Shown here: one piece after another, positions 3,920 to 63,519 of the stretch | Layout of the letters: each line of letters opens with the position of its first letter | How positions within the stretch are numbered: position 1 is the stretch's first letter | Sequence record: MH791404.1 | DNA: 64,000 nt | Direction: 5' to 3' (one strand) | The notes under the pieces: model-generated | Databases searched by the model: none | Told to the model about the DNA's origin: nothing | What the model saw: only the letters and a program-made list of their open reading frames with translations | Position numbers and translations under genes: made by a program

Positions 3920-3944
3920 AGCCATCCTACGGGGTGGCTTTTTT
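3920..3944 (+). terminator. Rho-independent terminator after inh
   Basis: AGCCATCC-TACG-GGGTGGCT plus T run; identical to 46507-46530. Confidence 0.85.
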
Positions 3945-3995
3945 GTATCCCTAAATACTAATTGACCATTTTGGTCAATATAATAAGGGTGTTAA

Positions 3996-4217: not shown

Positions 4218-4311
4218 TTTCGTATTGTATCAGACATTACGAATGTTTTTAACTTTTTATACTTAGGTGGTCGAGAGATCACCTTTTTGTATATTTTATA
4301 TACAAAATAAA

Positions 4312-4432
4312 ATAGTTTCACTTGCAATCAAAGTATAAAATCTCTATAAGTATTTATATAGAAGATCTATAATTAGAAAGAGTGTGAGCGAAGCGAACAG
4401 GCGGCTACGCCGTCTCACTACGTTCGAGATCT
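4312..4432 (+). repeat. 121-bp dispersed repeat, copy A
   Basis: Reverse complement of 46540-46660 with 3 mismatches; contains TTGCAA-N17-TATAAG (4322-4350), TATAAATA on the minus strand and a GC-rich hairpin region. Confidence 0.95.
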
Positions 4433-4472
4433 ATTTATTTATAATGCTATTTAGGTGTGTTAAAATATCATC

Positions 4473-5033
4473 ATGAAAAGGAAAATTGTAACTCTTATAG
4501 GAACCAGATATCCTAACGAAGAGTATAAACAGTTGATGATAAGAATTGGAAAAGCTTTTTCTGATCGTGGTTATGGTGCTAGATCTGGTGGTGCCATTGG
4601 TTCTGATACGCTTTTCCTAACCGAATATGACCCAGCATTAACCATTGTATATCGTCCTGATGATAGACCCGGTTGTGTTAATGTCAAAAATCATGAAAAC
4701 TATTATGAATTTGAATTGCTTGCTTCCCGTGTTCATGGGTCTGGTATTGGATGGGAATTTATGCCAATTGGTCACCAAGAATTACACGCTAGGAACGTTC
4801 CTCAAGTTATGGGATTAAATCTCAAGTCTTATTCTGACTTAGTTGTATTTTGTGCGGAAGAATCGATACATGGTACTGTATCTGGTGGAACTGCTACTGC
4901 GGTTAAAATAGCAAGAAGCCTAAATATACCTACCCTAAACATTATGAACCCGGTTCAAAGATCAAAACTTTGTAAGTGGTTAGGTATTGATGATATACCA
5001 GTATTAGAAAAGGTTGACATTTTCAATCTCTAA
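4473..5033 (+). CDS. SLOG-superfamily (DprA/Smf-like) protein
   Basis: VTLIGTR...RSGGAIGSD...RN..VMG...SDLVVF...GGTATAVKIARSLNIP pattern of phage DprA/SLOG proteins. Confidence 0.7.
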   Translation: MKRKIVTLIGTRYPNEEYKQLMIRIGKAFSDRGYGARSGGAIGSDTLFLTEYDPALTIVYRPDDRPGCVNVKNHENYYEFELLASRVHGSGIGWEFMPIGHQELHARNVPQVMGLNLKSYSDLVVFCAEESIHGTVSGGTATAVKIARSLNIPTLNIMNPVQRSKLCKWLGIDDIPVLEKVDIFNL

Positions 5034-5071
5034 ATATTGTTGTGGAATAATAACAATAAACGAGGTTGAAA

Positions 5072-5416
5072 ATGAAAAGCTCACCACGTAAGATCGCCAG
5101 AACTGCGCATGATGCGATTCGACGGTTTAATTTAATACTAGGCGACACCGATACATTGTGGAAAGAAGAACCAGAAAAAGTTAAACGGGTTTGGACTAAA
5201 CATGTAACATATATAATCGATCACCCTGATTCTGACGCTCGAACTGTTCATGAGCTTTGGAGAAATTATAAAGAGGGAGAAGGTTGGATATTTGGTGAAG
5301 ACAAATCTAGAGACGAGAAAACCCACCCATGTTTGACATCTTACGATGAACTACATGAAATAGAAAAGATGAAATATTATATTTTCATCGAAACTGTTCT
5401 TGAGCAATCAAAATAA
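5072..5416 (+). CDS. RyR (ryanodine receptor repeat) domain protein
   Basis: HELWRNYKEGEGWIFGEDKSRDEKTHPCLTSYDELHEIEKMK matches the RyR consensus H..W...K...GW..G..KD...KTHPCL.PY..L; GAGG RBS before ATG 5072. Confidence 0.8.
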   Translation: MKSSPRKIARTAHDAIRRFNLILGDTDTLWKEEPEKVKRVWTKHVTYIIDHPDSDARTVHELWRNYKEGEGWIFGEDKSRDEKTHPCLTSYDELHEIEKMKYYIFIETVLEQSK

Positions 5417-39292: not shown

Positions 39293-39321
39293 AAAAGGGA
39301 TCCCGATTTGGGATCCCTTTT
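39293..39321. terminator. Bidirectional terminator
   Basis: AAAAGGGATCCC-GATTT-GGGATCCCTTTT; near-identical to 62986-63014. Confidence 0.85.
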
Positions 39322-39323
39322 CG

Positions 39324-41162
39324 TTAGTTAATACTAACAGTAGAACCACTAATCTCGGTCGTACCTTGAGAGGTAATAAGAGATTGAGCAGCTTGCGATT
39401 TATAGTCACCAGATACAGTAACTGTATAATCACCAAAAACATTAAGGTTCATATCACCTTCTACGTTCTCGTTGCAATTACCTTGAACTGTTGCAGTTAA
39501 ATTCCCTTCTATATCACTAACAACACTACCACCGACAGATAGGGTCACATCAGCGTCTATACGCGATTCTAAGCCACCGTTAACAGTTTGCTTAACGTTC
39601 CCCTTCACCGACTGTTCAACGTTACCATAAACCGATTCAGATACGTTTCCTTTGACAACCTGAGTCAAGTTTCCATCAACTTGCTGGGTACAGTTACCCA
39701 TAACGTATACAGTCGCGTTACCTTCAACAACTACCTGATAATCACCCTTTACGTTGATCATCCGGTTTGCCATATCGATAACATAGTCATCACCCATAAC
39801 TTTGTTTACTTGACGACCACCACCAGAAATCTCAATATACGTCCCTGATGTATGTTTCAGGTTATATCGTTCTTTCCCCGGAGTATCATCAAATTCCTGA
39901 ATATGACCACTCTCCGATTCATATACATGGTTATATGGGTATTCAGCAGCATATGCGCTAGGTGGTTCTTCGAAAAGAAGACCATCAGTACGAGGTGGTG
40001 GTGGAACGGACGGATCATCTGGGTCTACTTCGTCAGCAAAAACAACCGGAGAGGACAATGCCATAATAGAACGCTTCATTCTCCCAGATATTGGGATAAT
40101 AGGCGGTTCCTCTGGTTTTGGTTTTACTCCATAAGACTCTAGGTTTCCGGTTAAAATAATCTTGGCAACCCGATTCGCTCGACCCGGAGTTTGTCTAGCC
40201 CAAAGAGAGTCGAGCATACCATTATATGCATCTCGCCAACGTTCTTCATACATAGCGTTTAGTGTATTTTTGAATTTCGCTAATCCGCCAGCCCCCATCT
40301 GAAACGCCATATTTTCTAAAGCCATTTGACGACTTCTATTTTCTTTGACGTAGACACGACGTATATTTTCGAATCTCATCATATCAGCACGAGTCTTTTG
40401 GATATCCTCGTTAAACAGCTTTGTAACGTCTTCTGGGGAGATCACACCCCCTTGTACAGGATGACCCAACTGTTGGGTTAGAATCGCATCTATACGGGCT
40501 ACGTTTCGTGTATTCTCATGTATGATTAGATGACCAATACCTATGGTTGGATATCCAAGAGAATCGAGATACCATTTGTTCCTAACCCCTTCGTCCCCCT
40601 TCAACATTTTTTCAATTGTGAAATCCGGATCGTCATCTGCGATTGCATCGTCAAATGATTTGTCATCAGGGGCTAATGCACCAGAAGTATTTTCATCCTG
40701 AGTATAAACCGATAACGGCTTTCCATCAATAGACACCGGGGCAGTTCCATGAATACCAGCCCCTTTTTGTCCACCACCGGCTAATATATTAACGTCGTTA
40801 CCAATATAACGAGGGTATTGACCTGTTGGGTCACAGAATCCCCGTAGAGTATTTGGTTTTTGGACATAAGATCCGGGGATAGAAAAAAGTATTAAACCAT
40901 CCTGTTTAAATTCATCCTTGAAAACCCCCATAACCCACACACCCTCTACTAGGTTTGTTGGGCTATTTCCCACACCAGATATAGAGGCTGAATCCGTTGA
41001 CGTGGCACAGCGCATCCAAAGAAGTTCATCAGTAGGTATACCGATTAAATCATCTTTTGATTTTTGATCAGTATGATATCCCATCACACGAACTCTATAT
41101 CTCCCTTGACTAAGAGGATCAAACCGATCCTCTACAACTCCAAAAAAGAATTCAAATTTCAT
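39324..41162 (-). CDS. 5: Baseplate hub / tail lysozyme gp5
   Basis: FFGVVEDRFDPLSQGRYRVRVMG (OB fold), T4-lysozyme domain DEG..D..GYPTIGIGHL, EYPYNHVYESESGHIQEFDDTPG, 8-residue beta-helix repeats. Confidence 0.98.
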   Translation of the reverse strand: MKFEFFFGVVEDRFDPLSQGRYRVRVMGYHTDQKSKDDLIGIPTDELLWMRCATSTDSASISGVGNSPTNLVEGVWVMGVFKDEFKQDGLILFSIPGSYVQKPNTLRGFCDPTGQYPRYIGNDVNILAGGGQKGAGIHGTAPVSIDGKPLSVYTQDENTSGALAPDDKSFDDAIADDDPDFTIEKMLKGDEGVRNKWYLDSLGYPTIGIGHLIIHENTRNVARIDAILTQQLGHPVQGGVISPEDVTKLFNEDIQKTRADMMRFENIRRVYVKENRSRQMALENMAFQMGAGGLAKFKNTLNAMYEERWRDAYNGMLDSLWARQTPGRANRVAKIILTGNLESYGVKPKPEEPPIIPISGRMKRSIMALSSPVVFADEVDPDDPSVPPPPRTDGLLFEEPPSAYAAEYPYNHVYESESGHIQEFDDTPGKERYNLKHTSGTYIEISGGGRQVNKVMGDDYVIDMANRMINVKGDYQVVVEGNATVYVMGNCTQQVDGNLTQVVKGNVSESVYGNVEQSVKGNVKQTVNGGLESRIDADVTLSVGGSVVSDIEGNLTATVQGNCNENVEGDMNLNVFGDYTVTVSGDYKSQAAQSLITSQGTTEISGSTVSIN

Positions 41163-44550: not shown

Positions 44551-45545
44551 TATTCGAAATAACGGAACGTGCAGAGTCCACAACAGAAAAACGCAATAGA
44601 AAACAATGGATTGATGTTGGTGTTGATTATATGAACGCCAAGAAAAAGAACCCAAGTCTTACTGCAAAGAAATATGCAGAGGAAAAAGGGTTGAATTATG
44701 AAACATTCAGTAGAGCTATGCGCAGACACAGAGAAGAAATAAAGACTTATTATTCTCTGATAAACCCAAATAAGAATAAACAACAATGGATTGAGCTTGG
44801 TGTTGATTATTTGACACAAAAAGAAAAGAGTAGCATTACTCTAAAAAATTATATTGAAGGACGTGGACTTAATAAAGAAACCACGGAACGGGCATTCAGA
44901 AGATTCAAGCAAGATATTCTACTGGCTAAGAANTTAAAAGANGCNCAAATAAGCGGAAGAAAACTATCTAAAGCCGAAAAATATCAGATGNTNTTGGCTG
45001 ACTTTAGAAATAAAGTAAGNCAACACGAAAAAGAGCCTGTNAAGTCTCAGAAGAAGTCNACGGAATGGTTTAACAATTTCATAAAGAAAAACGTTCGTGG
45101 NCACCAAGTAACAAGACCAATTGCTGGTCGATTGTATACTTTCGCATATGACGCAAAACATAAGGCAACACTACCATACTGGGATAAATTCCCCCTGATC
45201 GTATATCTTGGCCTAAGTGCAAAACACAAAGGTTTGATGTTGGGTCTCAACCTTCACTACATCCCGATCAAAGCCCGTAAAGAATTTATGGAAGAGTTGC
45301 TGAAACATGCAACCACAGAGAGGATTACCAACCGTACATCCCTAAATATCAACTGGGGTAAGGTTAAGGGAATGAGAGGTGCAGACCATATGATCAAAGC
45401 GTATTTGCCGGGTCATATTAAGGGTCCATTAATGGAGATTAAACCGCAGGATTGGAGTTCTGTTATTAATCTACCGACTCAACGGTTTGTATCTGGTGTT
45501 CCTCCGAAGACCTATAATACGAATTCCGTTTGGAGATCATACTAA
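44547..45545 (+). CDS. 2: DNA end protector gp2 with duplicated N-terminal helical module
   Basis: [33 protein letters not shown]; scattered N bases. Confidence 0.95.
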
Positions 45546-46501
45546 TGAACTTAATACCACCTATTCCAACCATAGATACGTTGCAAAATGCGTTTGACCG
45601 GACACTTGAGTCCGGTCTTAATTCACTAACAAATTTATCAATAGATGCATCAGATGAGATCCCCGATCTAACTAGGTTTATGCGGAAAGTTGAGAATACC
45701 GATTTGGCTAGACCAAACATGTTTATTGTAAGGTTCGGAGATTTCCGAACCTCTATATTCAGTGATGGTGTTTTTGATAGGGATTTACCGATATTTCCGG
45801 ACTCAAGCAGCGGGATGGACGTCAATGATAGTCTTTTCTCTGGTACAAGTTATGCTTGGCATAGAGTTCAGGACATTGCTTTGGGACAAGCACACAAAAT
45901 CCTCACGCCTAGCATGAAGAAGATTTTTGGTGCTTGGGATCCGTCCTTGATCCGGATCATACCGGGAGCAGGAGAGATCCTTGATGGATTTCTGGGAACC
46001 GATTATGATGTAAACCGCGATCTTGCACTTATGGTAAAAAGCGTCGGACTCCCTAGTTCTACTTTGGAAACGACAATCAACCGTACAGACAAACTACCTC
46101 GACACGAAGTAAGAGGTAGAAACTACGGAACCATGAGTATGACGTTTTACTGTTCCCCTTCTTATGAGGAACGTTCTTTGATGTTAACATGGCAGAATAC
46201 AATTGTCAACCCAAGAAATGGACAATTTGGATTTTATAATACGTATGCAAAGGATATTGACGTCATCACGTTAGACCGTCATGGAGTTAAGCAATCCACT
46301 GTACATAATACAGGGTGCTTTCCCATAGAGGTAGGTGAAGTTCAACTAGATTTTGAGAACAATTCTCAGGTAGCAACCTTTACCGTCACATTCGCTGTAT
46401 CAACTACAGTGCATGTTCCTACTAAGGGTGAAGAGAACACCATCGACTCTATAGAGAGTATCATAAGACGTACTACAGGCGTTGTGAAAGCCATTCGTTA
46501 A
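45545..46501 (+). CDS. 54: Baseplate tail-tube initiator gp54
   Basis: DLARPNMF, LMVKSVGLP, W.N.IV.P.NG, LDRHG, LDFENNSQVATFTVTFA; TAATG-coupled to gene 2. Confidence 0.88.
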   Translation: MNLIPPIPTIDTLQNAFDRTLESGLNSLTNLSIDASDEIPDLTRFMRKVENTDLARPNMFIVRFGDFRTSIFSDGVFDRDLPIFPDSSSGMDVNDSLFSGTSYAWHRVQDIALGQAHKILTPSMKKIFGAWDPSLIRIIPGAGEILDGFLGTDYDVNRDLALMVKSVGLPSSTLETTINRTDKLPRHEVRGRNYGTMSMTFYCSPSYEERSLMLTWQNTIVNPRNGQFGFYNTYAKDIDVITLDRHGVKQSTVHNTGCFPIEVGEVQLDFENNSQVATFTVTFAVSTTVHVPTKGEENTIDSIESIIRRTTGVVKAIR

Positions 46502-46506
46502 TACTA

Positions 46507-46530
46507 AGCCATCCTACGGGGTGGCTTTTT
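46507..46530 (+). terminator. Terminator after gene 54
   Basis: AGCCATCC-TACG-GGGTGGCT-TTTT; identical to 3920. Confidence 0.85.
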
Positions 46531-46539
46531 CATATCTAC

Positions 46540-46660
46540 AGATCTCGAACGTAGTGAGACGGCGTAGCCGCCTGTTCGCTTCGCTCACACTCTTTCTAAT
46601 TATAGATTTTCTATATAAATACTTATAGAGACTTTATAGTTTGATTGCAAGTGAAACTAT
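46540..46660 (-). repeat. 121-bp dispersed repeat, copy B (inverted relative to copy A)
   Basis: Reverse complement of 4312-4432 with 3 mismatches. Confidence 0.95.
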
Positions 46661-46733: not shown

Positions 46734-47519
46734 ATGACAAACAAAACCACAATTGACAAGAGTGTACTTCTTGCTGCTATGCAGAAAAACGTACAGCAGA
46801 CCAATGTAACTTTATCAGATGGTAGAAAGATCAAGGTTCGTGCTTTCTTGATGAAAGAAATGAAACTGTTGATGTTAGCTAACGAAGCCAATACTGGAAT
46901 CGATGATGCAATCATCCAAATCGTAAAAAACTGTATCCTAACTGATAATGTTGATGTAGACCTTTTACCTGTGTTTGACTTGGAAGCAGTTTATCTAGCT
47001 TTGTATAAGTTATCAAAAGCAAGTCCTACTGTTCCGGTTATGTTTACTTGCGCCAACGAAATTCTTGATGAAGATGGTAATGTTCAATATGACCAATATG
47101 GTGAAATTATTCGTTGTGGCTCTGATATCAAAGTAAACGTAAACTTGAATAACGCTAAATTGTCGGATGCACCAGATAACAAAATTGTTCTGAATGAGAA
47201 CATGACAGTTTATATGAGATATCCTAATATCAGCGAGGTTGAATATTTCAACGTAGAAGTTGAGTCCGACTTGTTTAACTTAATCAATCGCTGTATTGAC
47301 GAAGTTCATATGGGAGATCAGGTTGTTAAGGTTGGTGTTGATATTCCGTATGAGGATATTTCTGAAATTATGGAATACGCCGATTCAGTTGCTTTGACCA
47401 AAATGGGTAAATTTGTAACATCCCTCCCCCAACATACTCTAAATATACCTGTAAAGTGTAAAAAATGTGGACACCAAGAAATTGTTACACTTAAAGGGGT
47501 AGAAAGTTTTTTCGCATAA
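46734..47519 (+). CDS. 26: Baseplate hub assembly protein gp26
   Basis: KVRAFLMKE, NC, MRYP, CID, PVKCKKCGH...LKGVESFF, compared with T4 gp26 PIKCPECG...RGLKEFF. Confidence 0.88.
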   Translation: MTNKTTIDKSVLLAAMQKNVQQTNVTLSDGRKIKVRAFLMKEMKLLMLANEANTGIDDAIIQIVKNCILTDNVDVDLLPVFDLEAVYLALYKLSKASPTVPVMFTCANEILDEDGNVQYDQYGEIIRCGSDIKVNVNLNNAKLSDAPDNKIVLNENMTVYMRYPNISEVEYFNVEVESDLFNLINRCIDEVHMGDQVVKVGVDIPYEDISEIMEYADSVALTKMGKFVTSLPQHTLNIPVKCKKCGHQEIVTLKGVESFFA

Positions 47520-53857: not shown

Positions 53858-54107
53858 TATGATGTTTTTAGAAACAGAAAAAGTAAATTTGGTGGGAAGA
53901 ATACACCCGCTAGATATAGCAAACCAAATATGTTCTGTTCAGCCTATAGACCCTGAGCCATTTCGAAAACTATATGAGCGGGCTAAAGAGAACGAACGTA
54001 TTAAGATTCGGCTTTCTAAAGCTTTTATGGTCCCTGTATCGAGGATAGATGCATACTGTGTGGAAGCGTATCGACTTGGTATAAAAGAAAGTAAAAATAA
54101 AAGTTAA
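53847..54107 (+). CDS. Hypothetical protein
   Basis: 86 aa; contains DIANQICSVQP. Confidence 0.65.
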   Translation: MRNDMMFLETEKVNLVGRIHPLDIANQICSVQPIDPEPFRKLYERAKENERIKIRLSKAFMVPVSRIDAYCVEAYRLGIKESKNKS

Positions 54108-54144
54108 ACATCCTTTCTAACTGTGATATGATGTTTATATAAAT
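54095..54144 (+). promoter_or_regulatory. 50-bp promoter cassette upstream of tRNA-Leu(TAA), copy 1
   Basis: GTTAAAC-N17-TATGAT; one mismatch to 55261-55310. Confidence 0.75.
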
Positions 54145-54871: not shown

Positions 54872-55266
54872 ATAAACATGATATTCATCTCATTGGTATT
54901 AGTAAGTTTATCAAGAAAGGTCTTACTGTGGTTCAATCAAGTTTGGTCTTCAAACAAACCAGCGAAGAATGGAAAAATATCCATGGTGTTGATGTAGACA
55001 AAATTTATTGCTATATTAACAATGATGGTAAGGATATCTATGCAATTGGTAGACTTAGATCCTGTTGTGGACCTTGGTTGAGTGTTAGTTGTCGGTCTCT
55101 CCATAAAAAAGGTTATATAGCATTTGACTTTAACGATGAAATTGAGATACCATATGGTTCGGGGATGAAAACTGCTTATAGGGTATTGTTTTCTGACACC
55201 CCTAAATACGAGTATGATGAAGAAGCCAGACATCCAGTCGCTTACTTCGAAAAATACTTCAAATAA
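54868..55266 (+). CDS. Hypothetical protein
   Basis: 132-aa ORF. Confidence 0.7.
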   Translation: MNKHDIHLIGISKFIKKGLTVVQSSLVFKQTSEEWKNIHGVDVDKIYCYINNDGKDIYAIGRLRSCCGPWLSVSCRSLHKKGYIAFDFNDEIEIPYGSGMKTAYRVLFSDTPKYEYDEEARHPVAYFEKYFK

Positions 55267-55310
55267 AAGTTAAACATCCTTTCTAACTATGATATGATGT
55301 TTATATAAAT
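55261..55310 (+). promoter_or_regulatory. 50-bp promoter cassette upstream of tRNA-Arg, copy 2
   Basis: Duplicate of 54095-54144. Confidence 0.75.
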
Positions 55311-57170: not shown

Positions 57171-57351
57171 AAGGCTTAGATTCCCATAAGGGCCTAAGCG
57201 TAAAAGTAACGAGCAAGCNNNNNNNNNNNNNNNNNNNNNNNNNNNNNNNNNNNNNNNNNNNNNNNNNNNNNNNNNNNNNNNNNNNNNNNNNNNNNNNNNN
57301 NNAAAAGGCTTAGATTCCCATAAGGGCCTAAGCGTAAAAGTAACGAGCAAG
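57171..57351 (+). repeat. 47-nt direct repeat flanking an N gap
   Basis: AAGGCTTAGATTCCCATAAGGGCCTAAGCGTAAAAGTAACGAGCAAG at 57171-57217 and 57305-57351; gap 57219-57302. Confidence 0.85.
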
Positions 57352-62985: not shown

Positions 62986-63014
62986 AAAAGGGATCCCTAT
63001 TTGGGATCCCTTTT
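62986..63014. terminator. Bidirectional terminator between tk and e
   Basis: AAAAGGGATCCC-TATTT-GGGATCCCTTTT. Confidence 0.85.
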
Positions 63015-63018
63015 TGTT

Positions 63019-63519
63019 TTATGCGAATGGATAACCTTTGTAAGTACCAGTCTCAATAACGTCTGTAACTCTCTTAGCACGATTTGGTGTCTGTCTCGCC
63101 CAAGCACTAGCAAGACCGTGCTTCTTTGCTTCTACCCAGTTCTTGGAGCGCATAGCGCGAAGCATCGACGGGAAGCCATTTACACCTTTGGCCCCCATCT
63201 GAAAAACCATATTTTCCAATGCGGTTTTTCTGACTTCATCTAATCCAACATATGTAGACCATAAATCGACATACCCTTTCATAGAATTTCTAACTACTTC
63301 AAGATCTTTAGCAAAAAGTTGACTTTCTTCTGATTGAGTAATCTTACCGTCGGTAATAACCCTCCCAACATGGGAACTTAACTCACGGTTAATTTCCCCC
63401 ATATCTTTCGTACGAAGTTTCTTTATTAAATGACCAATACCGATAGTCGGATATCCTTCGGTATCCCAATAAACAGTAAGCTTCGAACCCTCGTCGAATT
63501 TAAGCATTTTTTCTAACAT
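63019..63519 (-). CDS. e: T4-type lysozyme (endolysin e)
   Basis: MLKFDEG..VYWDTEGYPTIGIGHL (E11/D20/T26), ALENMVFQMG..GV..F, S.WARQTPNRAKRV. Confidence 0.95.
   Translation of the reverse strand: MLEKMLKFDEGSKLTVYWDTEGYPTIGIGHLIKKLRTKDMGEINRELSSHVGRVITDGKITQSEESQLFAKDLEVVRNSMKGYVDLWSTYVGLDEVRKTALENMVFQMGAKGVNGFPSMLRAMRSKNWVEAKKHGLASAWARQTPNRAKRVTDVIETGTYKGYPFA

What the first reader, a model, noticed from the sequence alone, without database searches (positions are those of the whole stretch)
4312..4432. 121-bp inverted repeat bracketing the whole 42-kb morphogenesis module
Seen: 4312-4432 is the reverse complement of 46540-46660 with only 3 mismatches. Each copy has a sigma70-like promoter (TTGCAA-N17-TATAAG), a T4-consensus TATAAATA on the opposite strand, an AT-rich half, and a GC-rich half with nested stems (GTGAG/CTCAC, GGCG-GCTA-CGCC, GAAC/GTTC) and GCGAAGC. 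Both loci also share an identical terminator (3920, 46507). Known: d(GCGAAGC) forms an unusually stable DNA mini-hairpin, and mobile promoter/stem-loop cassettes (PeSL) occur in RB49-like phages. Inference: a mobile regulatory or replication-origin cassette whose inverted copies could invert genes 24 to 54 by recombination.
Basis: partly seen in the sequence, partly recalled or inferred. Interest (0 to 1): 0.75.

Follow-up and report, generated by a model that had tools for sequence, protein, structure and literature searches.

The report
Six-copy promoter-plus-RNA-hairpin cassette in phage
The 121-bp inverted repeat is real, but it is two of six fixed, evenly spaced copies of an undescribed ~115-bp cassette (bacterial-type promoter, AT-rich leader, conserved RNA hairpin) in a group of T4-like Aeromonas phages, and no sequenced relative shows the proposed 42-kb inversion.

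Summary
Window 4312-4432 is the reverse complement of 46540-46660, with 3 mismatches in 121 nt. The window is Aeromonas phage Assk (Ceceduovirus, T4-like).

The repeat is not a private bracket of the morphogenesis module. Assk carries six copies. They sit at the same six intergenic sites in phage 65-type relatives (Ishigurovirus).

Each copy has three parts:
- a sigma70-like promoter (nTGnAA, 16-17 nt spacer, TATAAG/T);
- a nearly invariant AT-rich leader;
- a ~40-nt imperfect hairpin.

Compensatory changes and G-U pairs support the hairpin on the promoter strand only, so it is most likely RNA.

Copies within one genome resemble each other more than their orthologues do, which points to gene conversion. 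The six copies are spaced more evenly than chance (P about 0.001).

All 14 or more related assemblies are colinear across both copies, so none shows an inversion isomer. I found no sign of mobility, and the shared terminator is a separate three-copy direct repeat.

Best reading: an early-promoter and structured-leader cassette. An R-loop replication origin remains a live rival. This is a new variant of the promoter/stem-loop cassettes known in T4-like phages.

The parts
4312..4432 (+). Cassette copy c1. Its promoter strand (called E+ in this report) is the window + strand. It lies between a 73-aa ORF with its terminator and the DprA-like gene.
   Evidence: covariance-model score 147 bits
4322..4350 (+). 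Sigma70-like promoter: -35-like TTGCAA (4322-4327), 17-nt spacer, -10-like TATAAG (4345-4350). The inferred start is near 4357.
   Evidence: Sequence. In phage 65-type copies the -10 is TATAAT with a 16-nt spacer. The start site is inferred, not measured.
4343..4362 (.). Dyad TCTATA-N8-TATAGA over the -10 and the inferred start. It is operator-like, and it also creates TATAAATA on the opposite strand (4351-4358).
   Evidence: The model matches its own reverse strand weakly over this half.
4386..4425 (+). Imperfect RNA hairpin (the 'rod'): GAGCG/CGUUC outer helix, AG.GA/UC.CU inner pairs, CGGC-UAC-GCCG triloop hairpin.
   Evidence: RNAalifold. Single-sequence folds of six divergent copies all give it. 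95.9% of cells are paired and 6 pairs have compensatory changes.
46540..46660 (-). Cassette copy c2. E+ is on the window - strand, antisense to the flanking + strand genes.
   Evidence: 145 bits. Phage ZPAH1 has the same orientation at this site.
46622..46650 (-). Promoter-like -35/-10 of c2, pointing left into the gp54 terminator.
   Evidence: Mirror of c1.
46547..46586 (-). RNA hairpin of c2.
   Evidence: Identical core. Mirror of c1.
46614..46621 (+). TATAAATA late-promoter consensus on the opposite strand of c2, 113 nt upstream of the baseplate hub gene. It is the only + strand consensus site ahead of that operon.
   Evidence: This motif is absent from phage 65-type copies and from Assk c3.
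3920..3945 (+). Intrinsic terminator after the inh gene. It belongs to a three-copy terminator family and is not part of the cassette.
   Evidence: (D9)
46507..46532 (+). Same terminator hairpin after gp54, about 10 nt from the hairpin end of c2.
   Evidence: (D9)
4265..4290 (+). A different intrinsic terminator just upstream of c1.
4473..5033 (+). DprA-like gene, followed by a RyR-domain gene at 5066-5416. This is the cargo downstream of c1.
   Evidence: the DprA match is weak, below the Pfam cut-off; RyR 1.5e-10
45530..46501 (+). gp54-like baseplate-tail tube initiator.
46734..47519 (+). Baseplate hub subunit (Pfam T4_baseplate).
   Evidence: 2.5e-54

Best explanation
The inverted repeat is two members, in opposite orientation, of a six-member family of a ~115-bp transcription-initiation cassette. 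The family is kept at six fixed intergenic sites in Ceceduovirus and Ishigurovirus phages.

Proposed mechanism:
1. Host RNA polymerase with sigma70 starts about 7 nt after TATAAG/T (inferred).
2. The transcript begins with a 20-27 nt invariant, purine-rich AU leader, followed by a ~40-nt imperfect hairpin. The covariation of the hairpin is shown.
3. Where a gene follows (c1, c5, c6, perhaps c4), this forms its 5' leader. At c5 sites the hairpin ends 2-15 nt before the Shine-Dalgarno sequence. The likely role is to set mRNA stability or processing, or to bind a regulator (inferred).
4. At c2 and c3 the same promoter fires against the local genes. There it gives a short or antisense RNA (inferred).
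5. At c2 the palindromic AT-rich half also supplies a TATAAATA late promoter for the baseplate hub operon (inferred).

Gene conversion between copies keeps them alike within a genome. Bracketing of the 42-kb module is a by-product of where two of the six sites lie.
For: Copy number and placement:
- Six copies in Assk.
- 116 places in 21 Aeromonas phage records, none annotated.
- Orthologous sites in phage 65, ZPAH1, avDM6, CC2 and AS-zj.

Promoter:
- The hexamers are kept, with a coupled change: TATAAG with a 17-nt spacer versus TATAAT with a 16-nt spacer.

Hairpin:
- 95.9% of cells paired; 6 pairs with compensatory change; covariation 0.184 against 0.078 in shuffles; 29-48% paired in slid controls.
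- Independent folds of six divergent copies give the same structure.
- G-U pairs occur only on the promoter strand. RNA folding energy is -20 kcal/mol (z -1.8) on that strand and -14.8 (z -0.3) on the other.

Context:
- A Shine-Dalgarno sequence and ATG lie directly after the hairpin at c5 in three lineages.
- Upstream terminators are present at c1 and c4.
- Concerted evolution of the copies.
- No tblastn-detectable MotA in at least 16 of the 21 element-bearing records, while AsiA is annotated. This favours an early sigma70-type promoter over a MotA-type middle promoter.
Against: - No transcription data exist. The start site and promoter activity are inferred from sequence only.
- The -10 lacks the final T in Ceceduovirus copies, so the simple consensus scan did not call the promoter.
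- Two of the six sites (c2, c3) are conserved in antisense orientation with no downstream gene. A promoter for downstream genes does not explain these.
- About 65 nt of the AT-rich half are almost invariant between genomes that are about 76% identical in core genes. That is more constraint than a promoter normally needs.
- Even spacing around the genome is not predicted by this reading.
- The pair counts were made on an alignment fitted to the structure.
Confidence: 0.5

Rival explanations
1. The six copies are R-loop type replication origins, like T4 oriF and oriG but sharing one sequence. The promoter makes a primer RNA that stays hybridised in the AT-rich stretch. The hairpin marks the end of the hybrid or helps load the replisome.
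For: - T4 oriF and oriG are about 100 bp, made of a promoter plus a downstream A+T-rich unwinding element. T4 has at least 5 origins, some near switches in transcription strand (PMC3016281).
- Here there are six copies, spaced evenly (CV 0.21, P 0.0013).
- Orientation is independent of the local genes (c2, c3, c4). This suits an origin and not a gene promoter.
- c1, c2 and c4 lie near strand switches.
- The site number and order are conserved across genera.
Against: - The AT-rich stretch after the inferred start is only about 27 nt, against about 50 bp in T4.
- T4 unwinding elements need no specific sequence, whereas this one is nearly invariant.
- T4 origins share no common motif.
- The spacing test was post hoc, and phage 65 is syntenic, so it is not an independent case.
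- There are no replication data.
Confidence: 0.2
2. The functional product is the RNA itself: a ~100-120 nt small RNA (AU-rich leader plus hairpin) acting in trans, or as an antisense or early 'anti-late' transcript. The mRNA-leader cases would be secondary.
For: - At c2 the promoter fires straight into the reversed gp54 terminator, in both Assk and ZPAH1, which would give a short transcript.
- c3 is antisense to the alc operon and is conserved.
- The whole leader and the hairpin are under sequence constraint.
Against: - The reversed terminators have weak U-tracts.
- At c5 a Shine-Dalgarno sequence follows within 2-15 nt with no terminator.
- No Rfam family matches.
- No target was identified.
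Confidence: 0.12
3. One reading: the inverted pair is a recombination substrate that flips genes 24-54, so that two genome isomers coexist, or the cassette is a mobile element.
For: - The arms are 121 bp and 98% identical in a phage type with very active homologous recombination (established for T4).
- Concerted evolution shows that the copies do exchange sequence.
- A flip would leave one copy driving the DprA-like gene and the other firing antisense into gp54, so it might be tolerated (inference).
Against: - All 14 or more assemblies, including phage 65, have the same orientation across both copies.
- The sites are fixed and syntenic across genera.
- There are no terminal inverted repeats and no target duplications.
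- There are no copies in bacterial genomes, and none in IMG/VR beyond phages 65, CC2 and AS-zj.
- No recombinase gene is annotated next to either copy.
Confidence: 0.05
4. The AT-rich half is mainly a DNA binding platform for a phage protein, such as a repressor on the TCTATA-N8-TATAGA dyad. The family would be a co-regulated set of sites, and co-evolution with the protein would explain the lineage-wide changes.
For: - Near-invariance of about 65 nt.
- Dyads over the -10 and the inferred start, and at TCTATAATTAGA.
- TATAA motifs recur about every 11 bp.
- All copies of a lineage share the same substitutions and single-base deletions.
Against: - No candidate protein was identified.
- Gene conversion explains the shared changes equally well.
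- It does not account for the strand-specific hairpin.
Confidence: 0.1

Closest known systems
PeSL (promoter-early stem-loop) cassettes of T4-like phages RB49/phi1, PST/T4 and nt-1/KVP40 (PMC2839356, PMC4122927)
   Same: - Small, conserved, dispersed intergenic cassettes in T4-like genomes that combine a sigma70-like promoter with a stem-loop.
- The copies can recombine.
- c1 heads a variable accessory-gene spot between inh and gene 24. The cargo differs in phage 65.
   Different: - In PeSLs the stem-loop is a terminator just upstream of the promoter, and the unit ends in a Shine-Dalgarno sequence and start codon. Here the conserved hairpin is downstream of the promoter, has no U-tract, and covaries as a leader structure.
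- There are only six copies, at fixed and evenly spaced sites, two of them antisense to the local genes.
- About 65 nt are nearly invariant.
- The PeSL papers do not cover Aeromonas phages.
T4 oriF/oriG R-loop replication origins (PMC3016281)
   Same: A unit of about 100 bp made of a promoter followed by an A+T-rich stretch; a handful per genome; some near strand switches.
   Different: - T4 origins share no sequence motif, use MotA middle promoters, and need no specific unwinding sequence.
- Here there is one conserved sequence, no detectable MotA, a shorter AT-rich stretch, and an added conserved hairpin.
- Origin activity is untested.
Leader RNA hairpins placed just after phage early promoters (lambda nut boxB, HK022 put); comparison from my own knowledge
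   Same: A conserved RNA stem-loop transcribed immediately downstream of early promoters, strand-specific, with conserved unpaired bases.
   Different: There is no sequence or Rfam similarity. No boxA-like partner or N-like protein was identified. Antitermination was not tested.
Bacterial intergenic repeat families such as ERIC and Correia elements; comparison from my own knowledge
   Same: Conserved units of about 100-150 bp in intergenic DNA, in either orientation. Some carry promoters and fold as RNA.
   Different: There are no terminal inverted repeats or target duplications, only six copies, syntenic sites, and no copies in bacterial genomes.

Membership tests
PeSL cassette | Sigma70-like early promoter (-35, about 17 nt, -10) | tested here: met
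   nTGnAA, 16/17 nt, TATAAT/G in all full copies. This is sequence evidence only.
PeSL cassette | Stem-loop terminator immediately upstream of the promoter as part of the unit | tested here: not met
   Upstream hairpins exist at c1, c4 and c5, but they are unrelated to each other and lie outside the conserved unit. c3 and c6 have none; the c6 element starts at the upstream gene's stop codon. The conserved hairpin is downstream of the promoter.
PeSL cassette | Unit ends in the Shine-Dalgarno sequence and start codon of a downstream gene | tested here: inconclusive
   True at c5 sites. About 40-100 nt away at c1 and c6. No gene follows at c2 and c3.
PeSL cassette | Many copies clustered in hyperplastic regions, next to indels | tested here: not met
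   Six copies, evenly spread. Three lie beside core late genes (inh/24, 54/hub, 35).
T4-type R-loop origin | Promoter directly followed by an A+T-rich unwinding element within about 100 bp | tested here: inconclusive
   The promoter is followed by about 27 nt of AT-rich leader and then a GC-rich hairpin. This is shorter than the T4 element.
T4-type R-loop origin | MotA-dependent middle promoter | tested here: not met
   There is no TGCTT box. The ORFs at the position syntenic with T4 motA lack MotA domains. tblastn with T4 and Aeromonas MotA matches 43 Aeromonas records. The 38 that were listed are all ~160-190 kb genomes or fragments, none of them an element-bearing phage. At most 5 of the 21 element-bearing records could therefore match.
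T4-type R-loop origin | Persistent R-loop and origin activity in infection | not testable with these tools
   Needs marker-frequency or plasmid replication assays.
Invertible DNA segment | Both orientations of the bracketed segment occur | tested here: not met
   One orientation only in 14 or more assemblies across two genera. Minor isomers within a population are not testable here.
Invertible DNA segment | Site-specific recombinase encoded nearby | tested here: not met
   None is annotated or found beside either copy.
MITE-like mobile element | Terminal inverted repeats, target-site duplication, variable insertion sites | tested here: not met
   The ends (TAGTTTCA... and ...GTTCG) are unrelated. 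The flanks show no duplication. The sites are syntenic across genera.
d(GCGAAGC) DNA mini-hairpin | G-C / C-G stem of two pairs closing a GNA loop, functioning as single-stranded DNA | tested here: inconclusive
   The motif is present. C-G changes to U-A in 4 sequences, and the loop is GAA or GTA. However, it shares bases with the covarying RNA helix, and DNA folding is no better than shuffles.
Any Rfam RNA family | Match at or near the gathering score | tested here: not met
   Only tRNAs reach the gathering score in the window. The best match in the element has E 0.16, far below threshold.

The most novel reading that the evidence does not exclude
The six copies are the phage's replication origins: a single conserved origin sequence (promoter, AT-rich hybrid zone, structured primer RNA) placed at near-regular intervals of 26-49 kb around a 232-kb T4-like genome. 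In T4 itself the origins are heterogeneous and share no motif.
Probability: 0.2. Interest if true: 0.8.

Novelty: new variant of a known kind. Interest (0 to 1): 0.5.

Why it matters
T4-like phages are a model for how large virulent phages organise transcription and replication. Outside T4, their regulatory DNA is almost unannotated. This family is an undescribed non-coding element with three notable properties:
- It is conserved across two genera at fixed sites.
- It contains an RNA structure supported by covariation.
- It is spaced more evenly than chance.

It is easy to test by TSS mapping and marker-frequency sequencing, using available phages (Assk, CC2, 65) on Aeromonas laboratory hosts.

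If the copies are promoter-leader cassettes, they define a co-regulated early regulon. That regulon would include the operon that carries asiA. If they are origins, they would be the first sequence-defined origin family in a T4-like phage.

The repeats also damage short-read assemblies (N and poly-A runs in two GenBank records). That is of practical use to annotators.

Tried and rejected
- **Rfam.** The gathering-threshold search of the whole window and the permissive search of the element found nothing relevant.
It is 92.7% paired, but covariation equals the shuffles (0.063 against 0.057). I rejected it as the main fold. An alternative conformer is not excluded.
- **DNA-level hairpins.** Folding energy is about -8 kcal/mol on both strands, with z near 0.
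- **Late promoter as the conserved function.** TATAAATA is missing from Assk c3 and from all phage 65-type copies. There are only 10 sites in the window against 6.5 expected.
- **Host or mobile origin.** There are 0 hits in GTDB genomes and only 2 short metagenome contigs, both phage 65-like. IMG/VR hits beyond phages 65, CC2 and AS-zj were pattern noise.
- **Apparent partial deletions of c1 in AS-zj and Aszh-1.** These are N or poly-A assembly artefacts, not empty sites.
- **MotA middle promoter.** No MotA was detectable.
- **Literature.** The PeSL papers, the T4-relatives genome review and the phage P19 paper do not mention this element.
- **Technical limit.** Loci fetched by accession were not exported to the Python sandbox. 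The genome-wide census was therefore done with the DNA search and cmsearch instead of local BLAST.

Full report
**Observation**

The window is Aeromonas phage Assk, MH791404.1 positions 143413-207412. Assk is a T4-like Ceceduovirus of the family Straboviridae.

The repeat finder gives arms 4312-4432 and 46540-46660, 121 nt, 98% complementary. The three mismatches can be read. The 35-nt GC-rich core occurs exactly twice in the window, against zero in shuffles.

The shared terminator is a different matter. It is a direct repeat (D9). It lies 390 nt from copy 1, and it occurs a third time after gene 34. It is therefore a reused late-gene terminator and not part of the unit.

**The pair belongs to a family**

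BLAST of the 121 nt finds 116 places in 21 Aeromonas phage records: six in Assk, nine in AP1, four in phage 65. None is annotated.

In the rest of this report, E+ means the strand of the element that carries the promoter. Pattern and covariance-model searches locate six Assk copies:

| Copy | Record position | E+ strand | Context |
|---|---|---|---|
| c1 | 147.7 kb | + | window copy 1; upstream of a DprA-like gene |
| c2 | 190.0 kb | - | window copy 2; between gp54 and a baseplate hub gene; antisense to both |
| c3 | 81.1 kb | + | in a minus-strand early operon; antisense to it |
| c4 | 122.2 kb | - | after the gene 35 terminator |
| c5 | 32.2 kb | - | 10 nt before a Shine-Dalgarno sequence |
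| c6 | 219.9 kb | - | the element's first TAG is the stop codon of the upstream gene |

The same six sites, in the same circular order, carry copies in Ishigurovirus relatives (phage 65, ZPAH1, avDM6) and in CC2 and AS-zj. At its gp54-hub site, phage 65 has two truncated AT-rich halves that converge on two triloop hairpins.

There are no copies in 185,579 bacterial genomes. Only two short metagenome contigs match, and both are phage 65-like.

**Anatomy**

On the E+ strand each copy reads, in order:
1. TAGTTTCA;
2. a -35-like nTGnAA;
3. a 16-17 nt spacer;
4. TATAAG (Ceceduovirus and ZPAH1) or TATAAT (phage 65 type);
5. a nearly invariant AT-rich stretch with the dyad TCTATA-N8-TATAGA and the motif TCTATAATTAGAA;
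6. a GC-rich domain ending in GTTCG.

The simple sigma70 scan does not call the promoter, because Ceceduovirus copies lack the final T of the -10. In phage 65-type copies the -10 is a perfect TATAAT with a spacer one base shorter.

These phages have an annotated AsiA but no detectable MotA. An early, -35-dependent promoter is therefore more likely than a T4-style middle promoter.

**Structure**

RNAalifold proposes a nested imperfect hairpin: GAGCG/CGUUC, AG.GA/UC.CU, and CGGC-triloop-GCCG. Six divergent copies folded separately all give the same structure.

| Structure tested on the 22-sequence alignment | Cells paired | Covariation score (shuffle mean) |
|---|---|---|
| Nested hairpin | 95.9% | 0.184 (0.078) |

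For the nested hairpin, six pairs show compensatory changes, and controls with slid partners pair only 29-48% of cells. The GCGAAGC mini-hairpin has one compensatory change, C-G to U-A in four sequences, but it shares bases with the outer helix.

G-U pairs occur only on the promoter strand. As RNA that strand folds to -20 kcal/mol (z -1.8), against -14.8 (z -0.3) for the other strand. As DNA neither strand beats shuffles.

The structure is therefore most likely RNA made from the cassette's own promoter. One caveat applies: the alignment was fitted to the model, which favours that model.

**Evolution**

In the AT-rich half, paralogues within Assk are 80-97% identical and paralogues within phage 65 are 85-95%. 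Orthologues between the two phages are only 71-81% identical. All phage 65 and avDM6 copies share two single-base deletions.

This is concerted evolution. The likely cause is gene conversion between copies, although co-evolution with a binding factor would also fit.

Crossing-over between c1 and c2 has left no trace. Every relative is colinear across c1 and across c2, on matching strands. Phage 65 has the same layout.

**An unexpected property**

The six Assk copies are spaced 49, 41, 26, 42, 30 and 44 kb apart on the circular map. The coefficient of variation is 0.21. Only 0.13% of random placements are as even. This test was post hoc. The phage 65 result (P 0.009) is not independent, because the two genomes are syntenic.

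**Interpretation**

The shared feature of all six copies is a promoter that transcribes an AU-rich leader and a conserved hairpin.
- At four sites this forms the 5' leader of a downstream gene.
- At c5 in three lineages the hairpin abuts the ribosome-binding site.
- At c2 and c3 the orientation is conserved but antisense.

I therefore rank the explanations as follows:
- an early-promoter and structured-leader cassette first (0.5);
- an R-loop origin second (0.2), because it explains the orientation-independence, the copy number and the even spacing, and because T4 oriF and oriG are units of about 100 bp made of a promoter plus an AT-rich stretch;
- a stand-alone RNA product (0.12);
- a protein-binding platform (0.1);
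- an inversion switch or mobile element (0.05).

At c2 the palindromic AT-rich half puts TATAAATA on the coding strand 113 nt before the hub gene. This is the only consensus late-promoter site ahead of that operon. It is probably a local secondary use, since phage 65-type copies lack it.

**Comparison with known systems**

PeSL cassettes are the nearest described kind. In PeSLs, however, the stem-loop is a terminator upstream of the promoter, and copies are many and clustered in plastic regions. Here the conserved hairpin is a downstream leader, and there are six fixed copies.

No paper found in the held library describes this element. I rate it a new variant of a known kind, of moderate interest. 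The main open question is whether these are origins.

Noticed in passing
Assk genome: c5 32.2 kb, c3 81.1 kb, c4 122.2 kb, c1 147.7 kb (window 4312), c2 190.0 kb (window 46540), c6 219.9 kb: The six copies are spaced far more evenly than random points on a circle. The gaps are 26-49 kb, CV 0.21, P 0.0013. No explanation has been tested.
   Followed up: partly
L021 5361-5561 (phage 65, between gp54 and the hub gene): Two truncated AT-rich halves of the cassette face each other across two adjacent triloop hairpins (GGGC-TTT-GCCC and CGCC-AAA-GGCG). This is a symmetric composite in place of the single inverted copy seen in Assk and ZPAH1.
   Followed up: partly
window 3920-3939 and 46507-46526; L004 26106-26125: The same 20-nt terminator hairpin follows three late genes (inh, gp54, gp34).
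   Followed up: yes
window 39293-39325 and 62986-63018; also 40291-40556 versus 63191-63456: A second reused terminator (AAAAGGGATCCC...GGGATCCCTTTT) follows both the gp5-like hub gene and the lysozyme gene. Nearby 84-88% repeats look like the paralogous lysozyme domains of these two genes (D4, D11, D12, I3).
   Followed up: no
window 57171-57217 and 57305-57351; 54084-54144 and 55250-55310: There is a perfect 47-nt direct repeat in the tRNA region. There is also a 61-nt, 90% repeat ahead of two tRNA genes, which may be a promoter or processing unit (D6, D3).
   Followed up: no
L031 and L032 (c1 region of AS-zj NC_048673 and Aszh-1 MN871442): The GenBank records carry N or a 20-nt poly-A run inside copy 1. 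This is assembly damage caused by the dispersed repeat.
   Followed up: yes
L003 30950-31096 (-): An unannotated 48-aa ORF with a Shine-Dalgarno-like AAGG starts about 15 nt from the promoter end of c3. The same start context is kept in a metagenome contig (L029).
   Followed up: partly
L004 21985-22105 (-), downstream of c4: A possible 39-aa ORF with an AAGGA ribosome-binding site follows c4. A T4-style GTTTAC-N18-TACTAT promoter lies between them and is conserved in avDM6.
   Followed up: no
whole clade (21 records): AsiA is annotated, but MotA is not detectable by tblastn or Pfam at the syntenic position. These phages may therefore switch off -35-dependent promoters without a T4-type middle activator.
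   Followed up: partly
window 4436-4443 (-): A second TATAAATA lies on the minus strand just outside the right edge of c1. It points away from any minus-strand gene.
   Followed up: no
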